Source: Macrostomum hystrix
Taxonomy: Eukaryota > Animalia > Platyhelminthes
Reading direction: 5' to 3'
DNA: 64,000 bases
NCBI GenBank assembly: GCA_950097015.1
Contig: CATNEN010000007.1
Coordinates: forward strand, 4,278,001-4,342,000
The notes below the pieces were generated by a model. It worked only from the letters and a program-made list of their open reading frames with translations. It ran no database searches and had not been told where the DNA came from. Positions 20,876-60,351 of the stretch are shown one piece after another. Each line of letters opens with the position of its first letter. The stretch's first letter is position 1. A program made the translations under genes and the position numbers.

Positions 20876-21877
20876 TTACTCTACACTTTCTTAAATCCCC
20901 CAGCAGATGTGAGATTTCAACAAGAATAAATTTGTTCCATGCCTTCCTCTAAGTTTGGAAAAAATTCCAGTAAATTATTTCGATACTCCCATGAGCTGCC
21001 GCAAGTAACACTTTTCTCCCTTATTGCTGACAAACCTAATTTGGAGTATTCCGAACGAATTCTCGCCGCAAATCCTCATTGGGATTAAGCGTTGCCGGTT
21101 CTTCATCCACTGGACTGAAATAATCTACCCCTCCGACTGAATTCCCTGGGGAAATTGGCGAGCGCACCAATCTGTGCCGCCGACACAGTCAGTCAACAAG
21201 GAGTTTATTCTCTTCTGGAAGTCCGGATCCCAAGATCCCTGCAGTGGGGAGCCTCCGGCCTTATTAACCTTGGCCCAGGGAGTTGCTGCGCTGATTTTAG
21301 CAGCTTAGATGATTGATTGAGTCCGAGCTGGGCTTCGGACTGGGGTCGGGGCTGAGGGTTATGAGTTCGAATCTACTGTAAGGAATAACAAATGTGATCC
21401 TGATCGGTGCAGTAGTAAACGCGGACATTGGGACTCGATAAATGGTGAAACGCGATAGCCAGCAGGCTGGGAAACGCAGAGCCAGCTACCCGGAAACTGG
21501 GCCATTGCAAGCTGAGAACCAGATTAAGCAGACAAACAGAACTAGCTGGACTCGTAATCCTCCGAGTTTATGCCGATGGGGGAGAGAAGGGAAGAAAGAG
21601 TTGGGATTATTAGTCGGCTGGGATAGCAATGGCAGATCTTGCGTGCTAAACTGACTGAGGGAAAATTGAAGCTCAGAGTACGAGTTTCGGCTAATTAATG
21701 CCCAATTGTGCTGCCTGCCTGCCCTCATTGCTGCTGCTGCTGCTGCTGCTGCTGCCGATGATGACGATGTACTTTTATCTTAGGGTCATCCTAAGGTTTC
21801 AGAGTTGGGGCGATTGTGAGAAAGCGCTTAAAGTACTCAAATTATACGATAAGGGTGAATAAGGAAATGAGACAGTA

Positions 21878-46617: not shown

Positions 46618-49422
46618 TCAGCCAGCCGGCAAATCAAAGGCCAGCACCGGCTGCTGCCGAGTGTCCAGCAGGTCGGCGATGATCCGGTGCCAAGGCAGCG
46701 ACACGTAGGTGAGGCAGGCGTTCAAGGACGCGGAGCTGGCCCTTCGGCGCTCCTTGAACCAGTGCCAGGCCTGGCCGAATGAGCGGCCGACCTGCCAGAT
46801 GCTGGCTCCGATGCTGCCGCCACCGACACCGCTAGCCGAGTCGACTTCAGTCGTCGAATCTTCTGGCTCGTCGCCGAATTCTTCCTCGATGGCACGAGCG
46901 TCAACTTCGCTAGCTGGTCGGCGACGCCGGCCGGAGCCGACGAAATTCGGGCGGCGACTGACGGCGCAGCCGGTCGTGTCGATGTTGGCCGAGTCCGACC
47001 GCGACTTCTTCATGCCGCCGCCTCCGCCGCCGCCTCCTCCGCTGCCAAAGCCGCCGGAAAGTCGTCGCTCTCGCCGACGCCTAGAATCATCGTCGTCGAC
47101 GTCGTCGCCGCAGGCGGATTCCGGCGCGGCAGTCACCGCCACCTCGGCGTGACCTTTGCCGTGCGGCCCACGCATGCGCAGGAATACCAACCGGCGACCG
47201 GAAGCGGCGCGGAAGCTGCCGCCGCCGACACCTCCGCTGGCCCTGGCCTGATAAACCTCCAGCACCGACTCATAGCGAATGCTGCCCAGGAACAGCACTC
47301 CCTGCAGTGCGGGGGATTGGCACTACACTTGTAACACTGTAACATTCAGGTGCCGCAATCAACATTCAGGTGTCACTATCAACATTCAGGTGTCACCATA
47401 AACATTCAGCTGTCACTATCAACATTCAGGTGTCACTATCAACATTCAGGTGTCACCATAAACATTCAGGTGTCACTATCAACAAGCAGGTGTCACTATT
47501 AACATTCAGGTGTCACCATAAACATTCAGGTGTCACTATCAACAAGCAGGTGTCACTATCAACAAGCAGGTGTCACAATCAACAAGCAGGTGTCACTATC
47601 AACAAGCAGGTGTCACTATCAACAAGCAGGTGTCACAATCAACAAGCAGGTGTCACTATAAAAACGCAAATGACACGCAAAGCCCACCTGCAGGCGGCCC
47701 CGTCTGTCGCAGGCCACGAGCTCCACGCAGAGCAGCTCGGAGTCGCGCAGGACGCAGTCGGCAAACAGATCCTCATAGTTGTGCACGCTGAAGAAGATGT
47801 TAGGATAGGCGATCTCCTCCTGGCTGGCCTTGCCGTCCATGCTGTGCCGGCTGGGGCTGGCGAACACGCGGCTGGTGAATCGGCGCAGGATCTGCAGCTC
47901 CCGGGCGCCGGTGCGGGTGCAGACGGCGCAGGTAACAGTGTAAGCAAACTGCTGCATGATGAGGTTCAGGTAGACACTCTCCTCCAGGTCAACCAACTGG
48001 TCAGCCAGGATCAGGCGGTAATTGTGCTGGTGCTTGCGATGCACCTGCGACAGATATATAGAGATAGAGTAGAGAGATAGAACAAGTGTCACAGCCGCAT
48101 CCAAAGGCTGAGAATAGCTGTCCAGTCCATGGACTTAAGACACCAACCTTCATTTCTTTCCCAGCTGATGCTGGCACCAATTTTACAACTGAATGAACTG
48201 AAGCACTAAAGAATTAATGGGCTGAGATTCGAACCGCCGACCTTTCAGTCCACAGTCCTCTAACCACTAAGGCTACAAGCTGCATCTGCGAGAGAATGGA
48301 CAAATTACGGGGGGGAGAGTAACTCTCTTGCAATAAACCGATGCACTTAAAGGCTAAAGTGCAGTCACCTGATTCAAAGTACCCATGGGAAGGTGACTGG
48401 CATACAATAAAGAGATTCTTATCTTGAAATAACATCCAAAAAGTACTGCAAGTACTCGAGGCTCGAGGCGGCGCAGTCGCAAAATCACGCAGCAACAGCA
48501 GCAGCAGATGACGCACCATGCCGCCTGACAACCTAGCGAAATGGATACTTTTGTCCCATGAAAATAAAACTGATGCTGCGTCTGGGGCCCTTCAATATCC
48601 CCATTTAATCTAAAATCCCTTATTCTGTAATCCCCACCCACTCTGCAATCCTTGTCCATTCAGTAATATCCCAAGTCATTCTGTTATATTATAATCCATT
48701 CTGAAATATCCCTATCCAGTCTGTAAAATCCCGATCCATTCTGTAATATCCCGATCCATTCTGTAATATCCCGATCCATTCTGTAATATCCCTATCCATT
48801 CTGTAAAATCCCTATTCATTCTGTAAAATCCCTATCCATTCTGTAAAATCCCTATCCATTCTGTAAAATCCCTATTCATTCTGTAAAATCCCTTTTCATT
48901 CTGTAAAATCCCTATCCAGAATGTAAAATCCCTATCCATTCTGGAATATCCCTATACAATCAGCAACATACCTTTCTATCCCCTACTCCCACGCAGAAGG
49001 CTCACCTCCACGGTGGTGCCCGCCGCGGCGCCGGCAGCTCCTGATGGGTCTCCCCGCCGGCGCCGCACGTAGAACACCAGGTCGTCCTTAAACTCGTCCG
49101 CAGGCAGAACGCCCGGCCCCTCGCCGCTGTCCTCTAGAAAGTGCTGCACCAGCAGCTGGCTCCAGAACTTGTTTCTAGGCGGCCTCGGCTGCTGCTGCAA
49201 GGAAGAAGACTTGCTGGAAGCAGAAGACCGCCGCTCCACCGAGATGGACGCCAGGATGCGCTGCAGGGAGCTGCTGCGGCTCATCCGGTCCGCCTCTGAG
49301 TCGCCGTCTTTTCCAGCTCCAGCTTCGTCGTCATTGTCGGGCAGCTCGGCTTCCAGAAGATCGTCTGAGTTGCTGCCGTCGCTGGCGCAAATGTTGAAAC
49401 GAACCGGAGCGCTGGTATCCAT
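46618..49422 (-). CDS. KIAA0930: KIAA0930 (DUF2045) homolog, 3 coding exons, about 485 aa
   Basis: Exons 49422-49006, 48044-47688 and 47301-46618, all phase 0 with GT-AG boundaries. Motifs recognised from KIAA0930: DDLVFYVRR, EESVYLNLIMQQFAYTVTCAVCTR, VFASPSRHSMDGK, YPNIFF, LCVELVA, GSIRYE, RMRGPHGKGHAEVAV, LTYVSLPWHRII. Confidence 0.9.
47340..47660. repeat. 20-bp minisatellite (AACAWKCAGGTGTCACTATC)n filling KIAA0930 intron 2
   Basis: Visible unit. Confidence 0.92.
48100..48282 (-). mobile_element. Second tRNA-derived SINE-like element (family B) in KIAA0930 intron 1
   Basis: Minus strand reads GTAGCCTTAGTGGTTAGAGG (A-box-like)...GGTTCGAATCTC (B-box), with no complete cloverleaf, followed by CTTCAGTTCATTCAGTTGTAAAATTGGTGCCAGC, loosely CORE-domain-like. 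Left boundary is approximate. Confidence 0.55.
48675..48955. repeat. 20-bp minisatellite (CCTATCCATTCTGTAAAATC)n in KIAA0930 intron 1
   Basis: Visible unit. Confidence 0.9.
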
Positions 49423-49713
49423 GGCAACAGCGGAGCGGGGGACCGAGCCGCGGCTGGAATTCGAGGTTGGAGAAAGCTGTCTAGAAGAGTAAAAAACGAA
49501 ACTAACGGAATTAGTACGAAAAATAATGAAAGAAACGGAAATATATTAACGAAAGTGCTGAATTTCGGTTACTAAAAGTATCGAAACCATTTTAACAGAA
49601 AAAACAAAAATAAACGAAATAAGCTAATAGAAACTAGAAGAAACAAGCGAAAAAAACATAAAGTTACCGGGCATTAAATTCAATTAACGCTACTGCAAGT
49701 AGAAACCGCGGCT

Positions 49714-49719
49714 TTTATT
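49714..49719 (-). terminator. Candidate polyadenylation signal AATAAA for DTWD1
   Basis: TTTATT on +, about 120 nt downstream of the DTWD1 stop (49840) and about 235 nt upstream of the KIAA0930 acceptor. Confidence 0.55.
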
Positions 49720-49839
49720 CAGTAGTTTGAAGTTTAATGCAAAACAGTGAGAGTGCAGCACACGATCCTAACCTAGAAATGCAAGCATAAAAATGTTTTA
49801 AAGCTGAATTAATCGACAAAATTGGCGTCACATCAAGCA

Positions 49840-52049
<2,210 letters not shown>

Positions 52050-52350
52050 CTGCAGTGCTTACAGTCCTGCGAGCAACAATTTCCTTTTTAAGGAAAAAAT
52101 AATGATCAAACGGTAACTAGAGGAAATGCGAAACAGCTACTAGGCTTTCATCCTCGGAAATAAGTGGCAAAACGCAACAAAGATTTATTAGCGAGCAAAG
52201 GAAATGCAAAGATGCAAGCGCAAGGCAGAGCATTACCAGTAGCAAATAATAGTACTATACTAATGTAGCACATTTGCAGGATCAATAAATATTACTGGCT
52301 ACTAGTATAGTGCTGGAGCTCTACGCATCAGTGAGTATTAATTAACGGCA

Positions 52351-52356
52351 TTTATT
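52351..52356 (-). terminator. Candidate polyadenylation signal AATAAA for TMEM42 (second candidate at 52184-52189)
   Basis: TTTATT on +, between the TMEM42 stop (52615) and the DTWD1 acceptor (52050). Confidence 0.5.
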
Positions 52357-52467
52357 TATAGGAAAGACATTGCGTGTAGTGCATTACACTACTGTTGTTC
52401 AGCACAGGTGCAACCCAATTATCTATTAGGGAGAGCTGCCAAGCACATTTCATTGCATTCTACTCTC

Positions 52468-52590
52468 TCCCATTCTCCCTGTCTACTCACCCATTCTCCC
52501 TGTCTACTCCCCCATTCTCCCTGTCTACTCCCCCATTCTCCCTGCCTACTCTCCCATCCTCCATGAATCTCCCATTCTCCCTGAATCTCT
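52468..52590. repeat. 21-bp repeat (CCCATTCTCCCTGTCTACTCC)n in the TMEM42 3' region
   Basis: About 5 imperfect copies. Confidence 0.75.
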
Positions 52591-52614
52591 CAAACATCCA
52601 GCTGCAGGCCGTTT

Positions 52615-53016
52615 TCAGTCAGTCTTTTCCACTGCAACCGTCAGCTCCTTTTCGCTCCGCTGCGTCTCCCGGCAGGCGATGAAGAATCCGGCCAGGATGA
52701 GACCGGAGCCGGCCAGCCAACGCGGCCCGACCGGCTCGCCGAAGACCAGAAAGCCGGCGAGGCCGGACAGCAGAAAATTGGCCGCGGCGTTGATCAGGGT
52801 GGCCCGGGCAGCAGAGCCGCAGGCGTGCATGGCACGGACAAACATCGGCCACATGGCCGCGTTGCAGGCCAGCCAAGCGGCCGCTGCGGCAAGGCCGGCC
52901 GGCCAATCAGACTGGCCAATGGCCGAGCCCGCCAGCTTGCCGGCCAAGGAGGCGCCCGCGGCAGCTGCGCCAGACAGAATGGCCCACAGAAATGGCGGCG
53001 GCTGAGACTTGGACAG
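52615..53016 (-). CDS. TMEM42: TMEM42-like 4-TM DMT/EamA-type small membrane protein (133 codons from the acceptor; no ATG of its own at the 5' end)
   Basis: Acceptor CTACTTTTCCAG at 53017 is followed in phase 0 by LSKSQPPPFLWAILSGAAAAGASLAGKLAG...NAAMWPMFVRAM...ANFLLSGLAGFLVFGE...WLAGSGLILAG, which matches the TMEM42 pattern. Confidence 0.8.
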   Translation of the reverse strand: MSKSQPPPFLWAILSGAAAAGASLAGKLAGSAIGQSDWPAGLAAAAAWLACNAAMWPMFVRAMHACGSAARATLINAAANFLLSGLAGFLVFGEPVGPRWLAGSGLILAGFFIACRETQRSEKELTVAVEKTD

Positions 53017-53094
53017 CTGGAAAAGTAGGCAATGGAAGCTTCTTGTTGATGGAATCGGGATCGGGAGTTTGAGAGGATGGGATTTGAACCTTGA

Positions 53095-53285
53095 GCGTAT
53101 GGGATCTGAAGTTTGGGATGGGATCTGGACTTTGGGATGGGATCTGAAGTCTGGGATGGGATCTGAAGTTTGGGATGGGATCTGAAGTTTGGGATGGGAT
53201 CTGAAGTTTAGGATGGGATCTGAAGTTTGAGAAGATGGGATCTGAGATTGGGATGTGATCTGGAGATTTGGTGGATGGGATCTGA
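53095..53285. repeat. 19-bp minisatellite (GGGATGGGATCTGAAGTTT)n
   Basis: Visible unit just upstream of the TMEM42 acceptor. Confidence 0.88.
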
Positions 53286-55085
53286 ATTTTAGGATAGTAA
53301 GGGCCATTTAGAATTGTGAAGGTGGGATAAATTTGTTTTGAGATTTTGTGGCAAAGTATGAGTATGAAAAAATCAATTCAAATCAAATATATTGCAAATG
53401 TAGATCATTGTGACATTTATTAAATATTTTTTTGCTAGCTTGATCTGAAAGTGAGTGCATACTAGCTATGAGCCCATATTAAACTATGGAAAAAGTATAT
53501 CAATAGCAACATTCATATTTTGTTTCAATAATTGTCAACAACCTGTTCGAAGAGCTCAAGAATTAATTTTATGGCACTATGTTTATAGTGAAGGCTTAAC
53601 TGAACAAACTTGTCTTAATGACTTTACTGTCCTCTAATTATAAATGAGTCATAAAAAATATATAATTTCAGGATGAGATATTCTAGTCTAATATTGTGCT
53701 ACAATATATATAAAAAAATAAAAAATATATAGTATATAGAATACTAGAATATGAATTCGAAAATGGGAAAAAAGTGAAAATAGAAATGTGAATGTGCATT
53801 TGTTTCTTTAGAAGCTAGCTATACTTCTATTAACTCCTTCATTATTTGTGGGATACAGAAGGATCACCCCAAGTATTTTATCTATCCACTTTTGGATTTT
53901 TTTTTATTTTAGCAAATAAGGTTATTAATTGCATAGGGGCAGGGGTATGGACTAAAGTGACATTACTGATTGGGTAGATATTTTAGTGAAACAATTGGAA
54001 ATATAGTAAATTATAACTTTTCTAGAAAACTGGATTACTGGTTTATTAGTTTTTACTTTCTAAAATTCATACATATAAAAATTACTTCTTTTTTATGGAC
54101 TAATTTTACTTGTGAAAGAAGCTGAATGTTTTATTCGAAAAAAAGCTGGAAAAAGAACAATGAAATAACCACTCAAATTTTTTCAAATTTTCTCTTATAC
54201 TCATTTTTTGCTAAATAACTGCGAAAGAAGCTCAAAAATAATATTGACTAGACTAACATAAAGACTCTCCCTGAAGTAAAAGATAACGCGTTAAAAAATA
54301 ACAAGCATAAAGTATACTAATCCATAAACCAAAAGAACCAAAGAAAACCAAATATACTTATCAATGCTATACTTTCTTATAAAAATTATGTCTTAAAACT
54401 GAATAAAATCCCAATGAACAATTCAGAAAATAGTCAGCTAGTTTTAAAGCAAAACGCCTGTTTTTTCTCCTACACACTTTATTTTATTTGAACTATACAG
54501 GATCAAATGAAAGAAGTTTCAAGGATTTGTTTATCTGATTTACCACGATAACTTTTAAGAATATCTTTTTCTTAGATAAAGTACCGAGTCCAATCGAACG
54601 AAAATGGGTTAAATACATTCAACAACAGTAATATTTTAGACCCAATGTATCAAAAATAACTTGCCAGGAGAAATTCAGCAATTATGTATTCGCGACCTAC
54701 TCGCGACCTAAAATAAGGTTTTGATTTTGATTTGCTACCCAGAGTTCTACTTATTTTTGAGTCTTGTTACTTTCTGCAGCCAGTTCAATTGACAACATTC
54801 CCAGGATGTCTTCTATGCAAATGTGAAATTGCGGTTGCTACTTGCTACAAAGCTATTTTTGAGGTAAGAAATGTTAAAATAGCTCAGTGGTTCGGTCAAT
54901 TCTAGTAATCTATATATAGTTTGCCGGTGTGAACGAAGTAAGTGAGAATCCAGCATTTAAAGTTTTAATAGTAAAAAAATGCGAAATCAGGGTACTTTGC
55001 AATCTGGAAGTTTAGCTACTTTTCCATGTTGCGCCTCTTAAGATAAATTTTGTGAATAGTGCATATCTTTCTCGTTCTCACAGCT

Positions 55086-58000: not shown

Positions 58001-60351
58001 ATTGAGGGCAGGGCAGGCGATAGTGGAAGTCCGTGCTCAAGTCCAAAACAAAATTTCCTTTCTAGTCGCGGTCACCGCTAGTGTGTGACCGGCCATCACG
58101 CGCGGCCGAGGCGGTGGAGCAGGAAATTGTGTGACTGGCAGGGGAGGTCTCGGTCTCATCGATCAGGCTTGCGGACTCGGGGTCAGTTGGGGAGACGAAA
58201 TCTGCACCCACCGATCCACGCGGTGGCAGATAAAAGTGCAGCTGAGGACTTCTGAGCTTCATCAGCGAGTGGGTGCACTCGTATTCCTTGTCCAGTTTGT
58301 CTTCCCGCAGTTCCCCAGTTTTATCCCAGAGCTACTTTTTCCCCAGGGTTCGATAGAGCCAGCTCAGGATGTCTGGATGAAGTGAGTTGGGAACATGAAG
58401 GACCACTTCAAAAGTTGAATTTAAGCATCTGAAAAGCTAGCTTTGAGACTCCATTACCGCAGCCCTTTGCTTTTAATTAAATTTCAGTCCTGTCTCCGCA
58501 CTGCTATATTTAGCGACTTAAGTGCTCAAGATTTAGTGCACTTTTCAGAGGATTTCAGAGGAAATCCGAGGATTTCAGTTTTAAAAGGGTGAACCAGAGT
58601 ATGAGGTGAGAATGAGGTGAGAGTGGGGTGAGAATGGGGTGAGGATGGGGTGAGGATGGGGTGAGAACGGGGTGAGAGTGGGGTGAGAATGGGGTGAGAG
58701 TGGGGTGAGAATGGGGTGAGGATGGGGTGAGGATGGGGTGAGAATGGGGTGAGAGTGGGGTGAGAATGGGGTGAGGATGGGGTGAGGATGGGGTGAGGAT
58801 GGGGTGAGGATGGGGTGAGGATGGGGTGAGGATGGGGTGAGGATGGGGTGAGAATGGGGTCAGAGTGGGGTGAGAATGGGGTGAGAATGGCGTGAGAATG
58901 GGGTGAGAATGGCGTGAGAATGGGTGATGATTGGGTGAGGATGGGGTGAGAATGGGGTGAGAGGGGGTAAGAATGGGGTGAGGATGGGGTGAGGATGGGG
59001 TGAGAATTGGGTTAGAATAGGGTGAGGATGGGGTGAGGATGGGGTGAGAGTGGGGTGAGAATGCGGTGAGAATGGGGTGAGAGTGGGGTGAGAGTGGGGT
59101 GAGAATGCGCTCACAGCTCACGGATTCTCAGTGAATCAGAGTGATTATCACAGCTCACGGAAGTGAATCAAAATCTTGCATATTCCCCAGCCAAATCTCC
59201 CTATCTGCCCACAGGAATCGATGGCGGCCCACTGAACTGGCCGCACGAGTTCGCCCAGTTCCACATGCACTGGGGCGCCTGCGACACCGCTGGCAGCGAG
59301 CACGCCATGGATGGTCGGCTGTACCCGGCCGAGCTGCATCTCGTTCACTGGTGCCGCGCCCGGCACGCCAACTTTGATGTCGCCGCTTCGGCCGGCTCCG
59401 GCGCCGGCGATCGTCTCGCCGTGCTGGCTGTGTTCGTTGAGGTGAGCAACGTATTGCACCGCGATACAGCTATAAAATAGCAAAGTTTACTAACTATAAG
59501 TTACTGCTATTAGTAACATAGTTAGCGCACAATGCTCAAAACTCAAAGCAATTGCATCCGAAATGCGGCTGTGCGCAGATTGGCCAGGCAAACGCAGAGC
59601 TAAACAAGATACTGACGAACTTCGACCGCATCAAGGCCACCGACTCGCCAAGTTTTATGCTGCCTACGCCTGTAAACCTGAGCGGTCTGATGCCATCCAA
59701 CACGGCAGAATATTTCACCTATGCTGGCTCGCTGACAACTCCTCCGTGCTACGAGTCTGTGCGATGGATTGTATTCCGGCAGCCAATCAGCATCAGCAGA
59801 GAGCAGGTTCGTTACATAATACGAATTCGTTACATAATACTCGTAGGACAGCCAGCCAATCAGCTGAAGCAGGCTCTACCAGACTGAAATCAGCAATCAC
59901 CAGCAAATCATCAGCAATCACCAATCAGCAACTGGGAAAGTCGTTCCAGTTATTCCGAAGTTGAATGTGGCAGCCAATAAGCAGAGGGCTGTAGATTTTT
60001 GGTAGTTTGCTCCAGCCAATAATCGAATGATTATAGTCTGGAGTCGATTGCGACAGCCTATAAGCAGACATTTTAAGAGAGTTGAGTGTGGGCAGAGATA
60101 CAGCGCCAACCAATAAGCGAAAATGTTAGGATATCGGAAGCGAATAGCTGTTCAGAATTGTTTCAATGTTGGTTTAGCAAAACCTAAATCTGTGCCGAAT
60201 TTCGCAGCTCCGGTCCCTGCGCACCCTGGATAGCAACCGAGGCCGAGTCGGCTGCAAAACGGTGGACAATTACCGGCATCTGATGCCGCTGGGCACGCGG
60301 CAGTTGCTAGTCTCGCAGAGGCCCCAAGCCGCTAATGACAAATCGCCATGA
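55086..60351 (+). CDS. Alpha-carbonic anhydrase, probably cytosolic, 6 exons, 324 aa (303 aa from the second ATG at 55149)
   Basis: Phase-consistent exons 55086-55166 (least certain), 56636-56702, 57268-57495, 59215-59441, 59579-59806, 60208-60351. Motifs: WGY..ENGP..W, QSPV, QFHMHWG (two Zn His), GSEH, ELHLVHW (third Zn His), [27 protein letters not shown]. Confidence 0.93.
55659..55764. repeat. 34-bp tandem triplication (TTGGAACCCCCTTTATGCACATGTACATATATAT)
   Basis: Three head-to-tail copies with no spacers. Confidence 0.9.
57190..57233. repeat. (CCTCGC)n hexanucleotide microsatellite just upstream of CA exon 3
   Basis: Directly visible. Confidence 0.9.
57722..57912. repeat. 11-bp G-rich minisatellite (GGGGTGAGRAT)n, block 1 in CA intron 3
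   Basis: Visible unit. Confidence 0.9.
58603..59108. repeat. 11-bp G-rich minisatellite (GGGGTGAGRAT)n, block 2 in CA intron 3
   Basis: Same unit and orientation as block 1. Confidence 0.92.

What the first reader, a model, noticed from the sequence alone, without database searches (positions are those of the whole stretch)
52031..53030. Two conserved genes lack a start codon and begin at in-frame splice acceptors; the initiator AUG may come from the spliced leader
Seen: the DTWD1 frame is closed by TAA at 52061-52059 and has no ATG before the DTW domain, yet two CAG acceptors (exon starts 52049 and 52031) are both phase 0. The TMEM42 frame also has no ATG between the acceptor CTACTTTTCCAG (exon start 53016, phase 0) and TM1. 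KIAA0930 has a tandem acceptor (exon start 49476) in frame with its own ATG, 18 codons upstream. Established: flatworm spliced leaders end in AUG, which can act as the initiator Met. Inference: these proteins get their Met from the SL RNA, so ATG-based annotation would truncate or miss them. A small cis-spliced ATG exon upstream cannot be excluded from sequence alone.
Basis: partly seen in the sequence, partly recalled or inferred. Interest (0 to 1): 0.78.

Follow-up and report, generated by a model that had tools for sequence, protein, structure and literature searches.

The report
Genes borrowing spliced-leader start codon
Two conserved genes of the flatworm Macrostomum hystrix (a tRNA-modifying enzyme, DTWD1, and a small membrane protein like TMEM42) have no start codon of their own and most likely take it from the AUG that ends the worm's trans-spliced leader RNA, a habit known in flatworms since 2006, so these are further examples, not a new principle.

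Summary
The window is Macrostomum hystrix contig 7 (assembly size and contig count match PMC10468722). On the minus strand lie TMEM42-like, DTWD1 and KIAA0930 in an operon-like row.

- **DTWD1:** the frame is closed by TAA 52061-52059. It has two in-frame acceptors (exon starts 52049 and 52031). There is no ATG until well inside the DTW domain.
- **TMEM42-like:** the exon starts in phase 0 at 53016, after CTACTTTTCCAG. There is no ATG before the conserved first helix.
- **Spliced leader (SL):** the genome's SL RNA genes end in ATG|GTAAG.
- **Acceptor motif:** all three acceptors fit the published Macrostomum trans-splice motif YTNCAG.
- **Relatives:** TMEM42 relatives start 1-15 residues before helix 1, as this exon does. 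All M. lignano DTWD1 models on record are 5'-partial, and one has no Met before the domain.
- **Same-genome precedent:** two ARL5-like genes put Gly2 directly after such an acceptor.

The scan has reported the same phenomenon at five other places in this genome. Verdict: probable SL-donated start codons, a new member of a known kind, of modest interest.

The parts
52615..53016 (-). TMEM42-like single coding exon: 133 codons plus TGA. It begins CTG TCC AAG with no ATG before helix 1.
   Evidence: There are 642 relatives at E<=0.001. The closest are eukaryotic 'EamA domain-containing' proteins of 116-160 aa, and the atlas clusters are named transmembrane protein 42. Pfam itself gives no hit.
53017..53028 (-). 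Acceptor CTACTTTTCCAG in front of the TMEM42-like exon. It is the proposed SL trans-splice site (phase 0).
   Evidence: 84% pyrimidines in the 20 nt upstream, fits YTNCAG, and the ORF opened by the SL AUG is 134 codons.
53057..53295 (.). 19-nt satellite upstream of TMEM42, probably outron. It has no stop in the TMEM42 frame, so the frame stays open up to ATG 53307-53305.
   Evidence: At least 235 matches are spread over the genome on both strands. GC is 0.47, against 0.71 in the exon.
51421..52049 (-). DTWD1 coding exon 1 (alternative start 52031). It holds an acidic, low-complexity N-terminus and the first half of the DTW domain.
   Evidence: It is 66% identical to M. lignano tRNA-uridine aminocarboxypropyltransferase 1. 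DTW profile positions 2-99 match.
52050..52055 (-). Acceptor A, CTGCAG (exon start 52049, phase 0).
   Evidence: fits YTNCAG, but the pyrimidine tract is weak (0.42).
52032..52037 (-). Acceptor B, TTCCAG (exon start 52031, phase 0).
   Evidence: fits YTNCAG, pyrimidines 0.58.
52059..52061 (-). In-frame TAA that closes the DTWD1 frame 3 codons upstream of acceptor A.
50210..51420 (-). The only DTWD1 intron. It is almost wholly a (CAGA/CAGG)n microsatellite, probably with GC-AG ends.
   Evidence: The junction is inferred from the M. lignano protein and from frame arithmetic.
49840..50209 (-). DTWD1 exon 2 with the second half of the DTW domain and the stop codon.
   Evidence: 56 bits, profile positions 109-192.
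52184..52189 (-). AATAAA in the TMEM42 3' region, 129 nt upstream of acceptor A. A second copy lies at 52351-52356.
49714..49719 (-). AATAAA after the DTWD1 stop (an ATTAAA lies at 49733-49738), about 235 nt upstream of the KIAA0930 acceptor.
49477..49483 (-). Tandem acceptor TAGACAG of KIAA0930. Exon start 49476 is in frame with the gene's own ATG 49422-49420. Exon start 49480 is out of frame.
46618..49476 (-). KIAA0930 (DUF2045) gene: first exon with its own ATG, and further exons at about 47622-48104 and 46618-47298.
   Evidence: (E 2e-41).

Best explanation
TMEM42-like, DTWD1 and KIAA0930 form a same-strand, closely spaced array in Macrostomum hystrix. It is most likely transcribed as one precursor from the AT-rich region upstream of TMEM42. 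Each mRNA is then made by trans-splicing the spliced leader, which ends in AUG, onto an acceptor. For TMEM42 (exon start 53016) and DTWD1 (exon start 52049 and/or 52031) the acceptor is in phase 0 and the exon has no ATG of its own before conserved residues. The leader's terminal AUG therefore serves as the initiator. The products would start M-LSKSQ… (134 aa) and M-IVNLFQ… or M-ADWDSQ… (about 333 or 327 aa). KIAA0930 has its own ATG and does not need the leader's.

Shown here: the gene identities, the lack of an ATG, the phase and motif of the acceptors, and the AUG-GU end of the SL RNA genes in this genome.

Inferred: that the SL is joined at exactly these sites, and that translation starts at its AUG.
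For: (1) Species and leader.
- The window is G000:C7, and the assembly has 220,453,370 bases in 42 contigs. This equals the M. hystrix assembly in Table 1 of PMC10468722.
- The 35-nt Macrostomum SL occurs 23 times exactly in the genome. In the SL RNA genes it is followed by GTAAG.
- The SL recovered from M. hystrix transcripts ends in ATG.

(2) No ATG before conserved sequence.
- DTW profile positions 2-99 lie upstream of the first ATG.
- In TMEM42 the invariant G16, A19, K27 and N52 precede the first ATG at codon 55.

(3) Acceptors.
- All three acceptors are in phase 0 and fit YTNCAG, the top motif at M. lignano trans-splice sites.
- The chance of an in-phase copy is about 0.02-0.03 per gene.

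(4) N-terminal length. Sixteen TMEM42 relatives start with Met 1-15 residues (a few up to about 35) before helix 1. The M. hystrix exon has 10. Little or nothing is therefore missing.

(5) Operon-like layout.
- The gaps are 565-583 nt and 363 nt, with AATAAA signals inside them. This is below the 1-kb operon threshold of PMC8629364.
- The upstream neighbour is a carbonic anhydrase on the other strand, so TMEM42 is the first gene of the row.

(6) No consensus mini-exon. No ATG…GTRAG phase-0 mini-exon lies between the TMEM42 stop and the DTWD1 acceptor.

(7) M. lignano models.
- The DTWD1 models were cut from transcripts at mapped trans-splice sites by the TBONE pipeline (PMC5730564). All are 5'-partial.
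- PAA65064.1 starts DNPIK…, with no Met before the DTW domain. PAA81337.1 starts seven residues further upstream.

(8) Same-genome precedent. Two ARL5-like genes have the Gly2 codon directly after CTCCAG| or CTTCAG|, with no ATG giving Met-Gly.
Against:
- Acceptor A of DTWD1 has a weak pyrimidine tract (0.42). Other AGs nearby (exon starts 52066, 52083, 52116) are out of frame and would give only short ORFs of 24, 25 and 36 codons respectively from the SL AUG.
- The satellite upstream of TMEM42 itself carries YTNCAG copies in rotating phases.
- One M. lignano copy (PAA81337.1, starting TMEANGI…) has a genomic ATG near the homologous place, so the gene does not depend on the SL AUG everywhere.
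- One ATG…GTGAGA mini-exon candidate (55150-55082) exists upstream of TMEM42. About one is expected by chance.
- Most genes sampled have their own ATG: 15 of 17 Arf-family first exons and 5 of 5 ribosomal-protein loci.
Confidence: 0.6

Rival explanations
1. One or both genes have a small upstream exon, cis-spliced to the same acceptor, that carries the ATG and perhaps a few codons. The spliced leader, if present at all, is added further upstream.
For: The acceptor motif does not distinguish cis from trans splicing: CAG is also the cis consensus. Upstream of TMEM42 there are 2.4 kb of AT-rich sequence with one ATG…GTGAGA phase-0 candidate at 55150-55082. Some TMEM42 relatives have up to about 35 residues before helix 1. 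With any GT accepted as donor there are 13 candidates in each upstream region.
Against: For DTWD1 only about 130-300 nt lie between the TMEM42 poly(A) signals and the acceptor, and no ATG…GTRAG phase-0 exon is there. The transcript-based M. lignano models of DTWD1 stop at this point and carry no upstream exon. The single TMEM42 candidate is what chance predicts (about 1.3 expected, my estimate).
Confidence: 0.2
2. TMEM42 is translated from the genomic in-frame ATG at 53307 on an mRNA in which the acceptor at 53017 is not used. This gives a 230-aa protein with a repeat-encoded N-terminal extension.
For: The frame is open from ATG 53307 to the TMEM42 stop. An ATG-based gene finder could well choose this model.
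Against: The 97 extra codons are a 19-nt satellite that has no stop in any phase of that strand. It occurs at 235 or more other places in the genome on both strands. GC drops from 0.71 to 0.47 exactly at the acceptor. No relative has such an extension. Because 19 is not a multiple of 3, a change in copy number would shift the frame.
Confidence: 0.05
3. Translation starts at a near-cognate codon. Candidates are CUG 52055-52053 just after the TAA in DTWD1, and CUG 53016-53014, the first codon of the TMEM42 exon. This could happen on mRNAs that are not trans-spliced or are spliced out of frame.
For: In-frame CTG codons exist at these places.
Against: If the SL is added, its AUG comes first and is in frame. 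Non-AUG starts are rare and inefficient (established knowledge). Nothing in the sequence points to them.
Confidence: 0.05
4. The missing ATGs reflect decay (pseudogenes) or assembly errors.
For: None specific. Both genes are present in a single copy, so no second copy is available to check against.
Against: Both frames are intact over their whole length. DTWD1 is 66% identical to its M. lignano ortholog over 172 aligned residues of exon 1, and by eye exon 2 is more conserved still against the C-terminus of the M. lignano proteins (not computed). The invariant family residues of TMEM42 are kept. The assembly is PacBio plus Illumina, polished, with quality value 42.8 (PMC10468722).
Confidence: 0.03

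Closest known systems
[quoted passage not shown]
   Same: The SL ends in AUG directly before its GU donor. The recipient exon starts in phase 0 with no AUG of its own before conserved residues. The genes are conserved housekeeping-type genes.
   Different: The species is a free-living macrostomid. For these two genes the SL junction and translation from the SL AUG are inferred, not shown. DTWD1 offers two in-frame acceptors 18 nt apart.
SL trans-splicing and operons in Macrostomum lignano (PMC8629364; PMC5730564) and SL annotation in M. hystrix (PMC10468722)
   Same: The 35-nt SL is identical. The acceptor motif is YTNCAG. The genes lie on the same strand less than 1 kb apart. Conserved genes are enriched among trans-spliced ones.
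   Different: In the passages read here, those papers describe SL use and operons but do not list genes that depend on the SL AUG. [quoted passage not shown]
DTWD1 / tRNA-uridine aminocarboxypropyltransferase 1 (Pfam DTW, PF03942)
   Same: A complete DTW domain is split over two exons. It is 66% identical to the M. lignano protein of that name.
   Different: There is no genomic start codon. The N-terminus is acidic and low-complexity and differs in length from M. lignano, which has a (DKDQDLRS)n expansion.
TMEM42 (small four-helix EamA/DMT-type membrane proteins of eukaryotes)
   Same: The length is similar (134 aa against 116-160 aa). The invariant G, A, K, N, N, G, F, E, G, G positions are kept. 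Like two relatives, it ends in …KTD.
   Different: Pfam EamA does not reach its threshold on this protein. The name rests on relatives and on an automatic atlas cluster name.

Membership tests
SL-AUG-initiated gene (slORF, Cheng et al. 2006) | The organism's spliced leader ends in AUG immediately before the GU donor | tested here: met
   the SL RNA genes on C15, C17 and C42 read …TTGCATG|GTAAG; the M. hystrix SL assembled from transcripts ends in ATG.
SL-AUG-initiated gene (slORF, Cheng et al. 2006) | The acceptor is in phase 0 with the conserved ORF, with no stop between them | tested here: met
   exon starts 53016, 52049 and 52031 are all in phase 0. The ORFs opened by the SL AUG are 134 codons for TMEM42 and, within exon 1 alone, 234 and 228 codons for DTWD1.
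SL-AUG-initiated gene (slORF, Cheng et al. 2006) | No genomic in-frame AUG between the acceptor and the conserved N-terminal residues | tested here: met
SL-AUG-initiated gene (slORF, Cheng et al. 2006) | The SL is found joined to this exon in mRNA | not testable with these tools
No RNA-derived protein of either gene is in the collections.
SL-AUG-initiated gene (slORF, Cheng et al. 2006) | Translation starts at the SL AUG | not testable with these tools
   This needs ribosome profiling or N-terminal peptides.
Macrostomum SL operon (PMC8629364) | Same-strand neighbours with repeat-adjusted gaps under 1 kb | tested here: met
   565-583 nt from TMEM42 to DTWD1 and 363 nt from DTWD1 to KIAA0930, unadjusted. 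The upstream neighbour is on the other strand.
Macrostomum SL operon (PMC8629364) | Downstream genes are trans-spliced and one precursor transcript exists | not testable with these tools
   No transcript data could be reached.
DTWD1 (DTW domain, PF03942) | A DTW domain above the Pfam cut-off and orthology to a named DTWD1 | tested here: met
   exon 2 scores 56 bits (cut-off 33.7). Exon 1 scores 22.5 bits alone, covering profile positions 2-99; 66% identity to the M. lignano protein. The joined two-exon model was not searched.
TMEM42 / small EamA proteins | Significant similarity over the whole length to the family, with the conserved residues kept | tested here: met
   642 relatives; 10 invariant columns are kept; the relatives are named EamA domain-containing; the atlas clusters are named transmembrane protein 42. 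Pfam gives no hit.
KIAA0930 (DUF2045, PF09741) | A DUF2045 domain above the cut-off | tested here: met
   142 bits and 38.9 bits on two exons; the relatives are named KIAA0930 homolog.

The most novel reading that the evidence does not exclude
Start-codon turnover between congeners. In one M. lignano copy the DTWD1 model reads …T-M-E-A-N-G-I-D-N…, with a genomic ATG. The apparently homologous M. hystrix codons read CTG-TAA-GCA-CTG-CAG|ATT-GTC-AAT. On this reading M. hystrix lost the genomic start, gained a stop, and made DTWD1 wholly dependent on the leader's AUG. Two in-frame acceptors 18 nt apart would then give two N-terminal isoforms. The two M. lignano models, whose starts lie seven residues apart, echo this spacing. 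This would show the SL AUG acting as a buffer that lets genomic start codons decay.
Probability: 0.25. Interest if true: 0.45.

Novelty: new member of a known kind. Interest (0 to 1): 0.25.

Why it matters
The value is practical. Gene finders that require a genomic ATG will handle such genes badly. They may truncate them (TMEM42 from codon 55 would lose helix 1). They may extend them through junk (the 230-aa satellite model). They may leave them partial, as all M. lignano DTWD1 entries are, or miss them altogether. No Macrostomum TMEM42-like protein turned up in either protein collection.

In the small samples taken here, 2 of 17 Arf-family first exons lacked their own ATG, and 0 of 5 ribosomal-protein loci did. 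The scan has also flagged several more cases in this genome. The annotation of Macrostomum genomes would therefore gain from adding the leader's ATG at mapped trans-splice sites. It does not change what is known about the mechanism.

Tried and rejected
- **RNA-level proof.** So neither the M. lignano orthologous loci (PAA81337.1, PAA65064.1) nor RNA assemblies could be read.
- **Paralogs or retrocopies of the two genes in the genome.** These could have acted as fossil cDNAs. None exists; both genes are single copy.
- **Dispersed genomic copies of the SL as fossil SL-mRNA junctions.**
  - At least 25 retroposed copies exist.
  - None has a long ORF from the SL ATG (the longest is 84 codons).
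  - They say nothing about use of the frame.
- **Ribosomal-protein genes with fixed N-termini as further test cases.** All 5 loci (L37e, S21e, L34e) have their own ATG, or an in-frame ATG next to the matched region, 8-19 nt after a good acceptor where one is visible.
- **M. lignano KIAA0930 as a check that the orthologs share one transcriptional unit.**
  - The only hit (BOX15_Mlig026296g3) is 42% identical and carries another unit's number. This gives no information.
  - I also considered reading the '.g2' suffix of the M. lignano DTWD1 names as 'second gene of the unit'. I dropped this because the numbering may count clustered copies.
- **Automatic alignment of the DTWD1 N-termini.** It is dominated by the M. 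lignano DKDQDLRS repeat and is not reliable. The N-terminal correspondence is by eye only.
- **The joined two-exon DTWD1 model.** It was not built or searched.

Full report
**Where the window comes from.** The window is G000:C7:4278001-4342000 of an assembly of 220,453,370 bases in 42 contigs. These two numbers are exactly those given for Macrostomum hystrix in Table 1 of PMC10468722. Exons are GC-rich (0.6-0.7), and introns and intergenic DNA are AT-rich or made of satellites.

**The observation.** Reading the minus strand confirms each coordinate.
- *DTWD1.* The frame is closed by TAA at 52061-52059. Three codons later comes CTGCAG|ATTGTCAAT (exon start 52049), and 18 nt further TTCCAG|GCGGATTGG (exon start 52031). 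Both are in phase 0.
  - The first in-frame ATG is at …ADRMSAGV. Pfam places DTW profile positions 2-99 from residue 100 of this exon, and positions 109-192 in the second exon.
  - A start at that ATG would therefore remove about half of the domain.
- *TMEM42-like.* The ORF begins in phase 0 at 53016, after CTACTTTTCCAG. Its first ATG is codon 55.
- *KIAA0930.* The identity is confirmed as DUF2045 (E 2e-41; named relatives). It has its own ATG at 49422. The acceptor giving exon start 49476 is in frame 18 codons upstream, and the TAG acceptor 4 nt before it is out of frame.
  - The mussel ortholog starts even further downstream, so KIAA0930 needs no borrowed start.

The TMEM42 frame is not closed upstream. 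It stays open for 97 codons up to an ATG at 53307.
- That stretch is a 19-nt satellite whose unit has no stop in any phase.
- It occurs at 235 or more other places in the genome on both strands.
- GC falls from 0.71 to 0.47 at the acceptor, and no relative has such an extension.
- I take the 230-aa ORF for an artefact, though an ATG-based gene finder might choose it.

**What the genes are.**
- *DTWD1.* It is 66% identical over exon 1 to M. lignano 'tRNA-uridine aminocarboxypropyltransferase 1'.
- *TMEM42-like.*
  - Pfam gives no hit and the word search gives only one, so the large search was justified.
  - That search found 642 relatives. The closest are small eukaryotic proteins named 'EamA domain-containing', from insects, a mite, a nematode, a moss and a fungus. 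Atlas clusters are named 'transmembrane protein 42'.
  - In the alignment of 16 relatives, ten columns are invariant, and four of them (G16, A19, K27, N52) lie before the first ATG.
  - All relatives begin with Met. In most, Met sits 1-15 residues before helix 1, and the M. hystrix exon has 10 residues there. The true start is therefore at or very near the acceptor.
- Both genes are single copy.

**The leader.**
- The 35-nt Macrostomum SL (PMC8629364) occurs 23 times exactly in the genome, mostly in arrays of about 11.6-kb period on C15, C17 and C42.
- There it reads …TTGCATG|GTAAGACACCG…, so the leader ends in AUG directly before the donor.
- The M. hystrix SL assembled from transcripts also ends in ATG (Table S3 of PMC10468722). 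[quoted passage not shown]
- All reported flatworm SLs end in AUG, and this AUG can serve as initiator. This has been established since Cheng et al. 2006. In S. mansoni it is in frame in 28% of trans-spliced mRNAs, and more than 40 cDNAs need it (PMC9851317; PMC12582326).

**Are these trans-splice sites?** The direct test was not possible. The indirect evidence is as follows.
- *(a) Motif.* All three acceptors fit YTNCAG, the top motif at 21,754 M. lignano trans-splice sites. On this strand the motif occurs once per 424 nt. An in-phase copy within 10-12 codons has a chance of 0.02-0.03, and two copies 0.0003. This shows real acceptors, not that they are trans acceptors.
- *(b) Layout.* The three genes lie on one strand with gaps of 565-583 and 363 nt that contain AATAAA signals. 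This is under the 1-kb operon threshold for M. lignano, where 82% of operons also start with a trans-spliced gene. The next recognisable gene upstream is a carbonic anhydrase on the other strand, so TMEM42 heads the row.
- *(c) Mini-exons.* Between the TMEM42 stop and the DTWD1 acceptor there is no ATG…GTRAG phase-0 mini-exon. Upstream of TMEM42 there is one (55150-55082), about the number expected by chance.
- *(d) M. lignano models.*
  - The M. lignano annotation cut its mRNAs at mapped trans-splice sites after trimming the SL (TBONE pipeline, PMC5730564).
  - All three DTWD1 entries are 5'-partial. PAA65064.1 begins DNPIK… and has no Met before the DTW domain. PAA81337.1 begins TMEANGIDNPIK….
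  - By eye, I-D-N-P-I-K…Q-L-N-L-I-E matches M. hystrix I-V-N-L-F-Q…Q-L-R-L-E-D. The M. lignano mRNA ends thus fall at the place of the M. hystrix acceptors, and no upstream exon is attached. Automatic alignment there is unreliable.
- *(e) Same-genome precedent.*
  - Among 17 Arf-family first exons, two ARL5-like genes (L048, L050) have the Gly2 codon directly after CTCCAG| or CTTCAG|, with no ATG that would give Met-Gly.
  - Arf-family proteins need Met-Gly for N-myristoylation (established knowledge), so the leader's AUG is the obvious source.
  - The other 15, and five ribosomal-protein loci, have their own ATG.

**Against.**
- Acceptor A of DTWD1 has a poor pyrimidine tract.
- Out-of-frame AGs lie nearby (exon starts 52066, 52083, 52116).
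- The satellite upstream of TMEM42 carries further YTNCAG copies in rotating phases.
- One M. lignano copy has a genomic ATG near the homologous place.

**Odds.** I put SL-donated starts at about 0.7 for DTWD1 and about 0.6 for TMEM42, and 0.6 for the statement as a whole. The rivals are:

| Rival | Odds |
|---|---|
| Small cis-spliced ATG exon | about 0.2 |
| The 230-aa satellite ORF | 0.05 |
| A near-cognate start | 0.05 |
| Decay or assembly error | 0.03 |

**Novelty.**
- The mechanism is known, the species' own genome paper mentions it, and the scan has reported it at five other places in this genome. One of these is ARL5, whose genomic layout I re-checked.
- These are two further probable examples. 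The only less ordinary angle is possible start-codon turnover: M. lignano ATG-GAA where M. hystrix reads CTG-TAA, with paired in-frame acceptors. That rests on a short by-eye alignment.

Noticed in passing
G000 (outside the window): e.g. C7:8561392, C7:8556404, C38:27887533, C24:365106, C1:13208216, C8:629341, C39:13518925; also C10:571695, C14:826582, C39:7709360 (loci L002-L004, L011-L041): At least 25 dispersed genomic copies carry the full spliced leader, including its 5' part GCCGTAAAGA, joined to sequence that is not SL RNA. These are retroposed copies of trans-spliced RNAs. Seven share one downstream sequence and three share another, so some behave like small repeat families. None keeps a long ORF from the SL ATG.
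   Followed up: partly
G000:C15, C17 and C42 (e.g. L005-L008): The SL RNA genes sit in tandem arrays with a period of about 11.6-11.7 kb. What else the repeat unit holds was not examined.
   Followed up: no
window 50210-51420: The only intron of DTWD1 is about 1.2 kb of almost pure (CAGA/CAGG)n microsatellite. Homology to M. lignano and frame arithmetic favour a GC-AG intron (AG|GCAAGC donor at 51420).
   Followed up: partly
window 53057-53295; also 48647-48955 and 52465-52583: Short satellites (19-, 20- and 21-nt units) fill the spaces between and inside these genes. The 19-nt one is a genome-wide family (235 or more matches) and has no stop in the TMEM42 frame, which creates a spurious 230-aa ORF.
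   Followed up: yes
G000:C7:11281243-11281740 (-) = L048; G000:C5:1471629-1472123 (-) = L050: Two ARL5-like GTPase genes begin with the Gly2 codon directly after a YTNCAG acceptor and have no ATG that would give Met-Gly. This is the same start-codon borrowing, and a cleaner case because Gly must be residue 2.
   Followed up: partly
M. lignano proteins P0002, P0003, P0004 (A0A1I8JLU2, PAA81337.1, PAA65064.1): The N-terminus of M. lignano DTWD1 carries a (DKDQDLRS)n repeat whose copy number differs greatly between gene copies (protein models of 303, 220 and 507 aa). M. hystrix has only one or two degenerate units.
   Followed up: no
window 59163-59887 (+): Two exons of an alpha-type carbonic anhydrase (Pfam PF00194) lie on the opposite strand. 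It is the nearest recognisable neighbour upstream of the trio.
   Followed up: no
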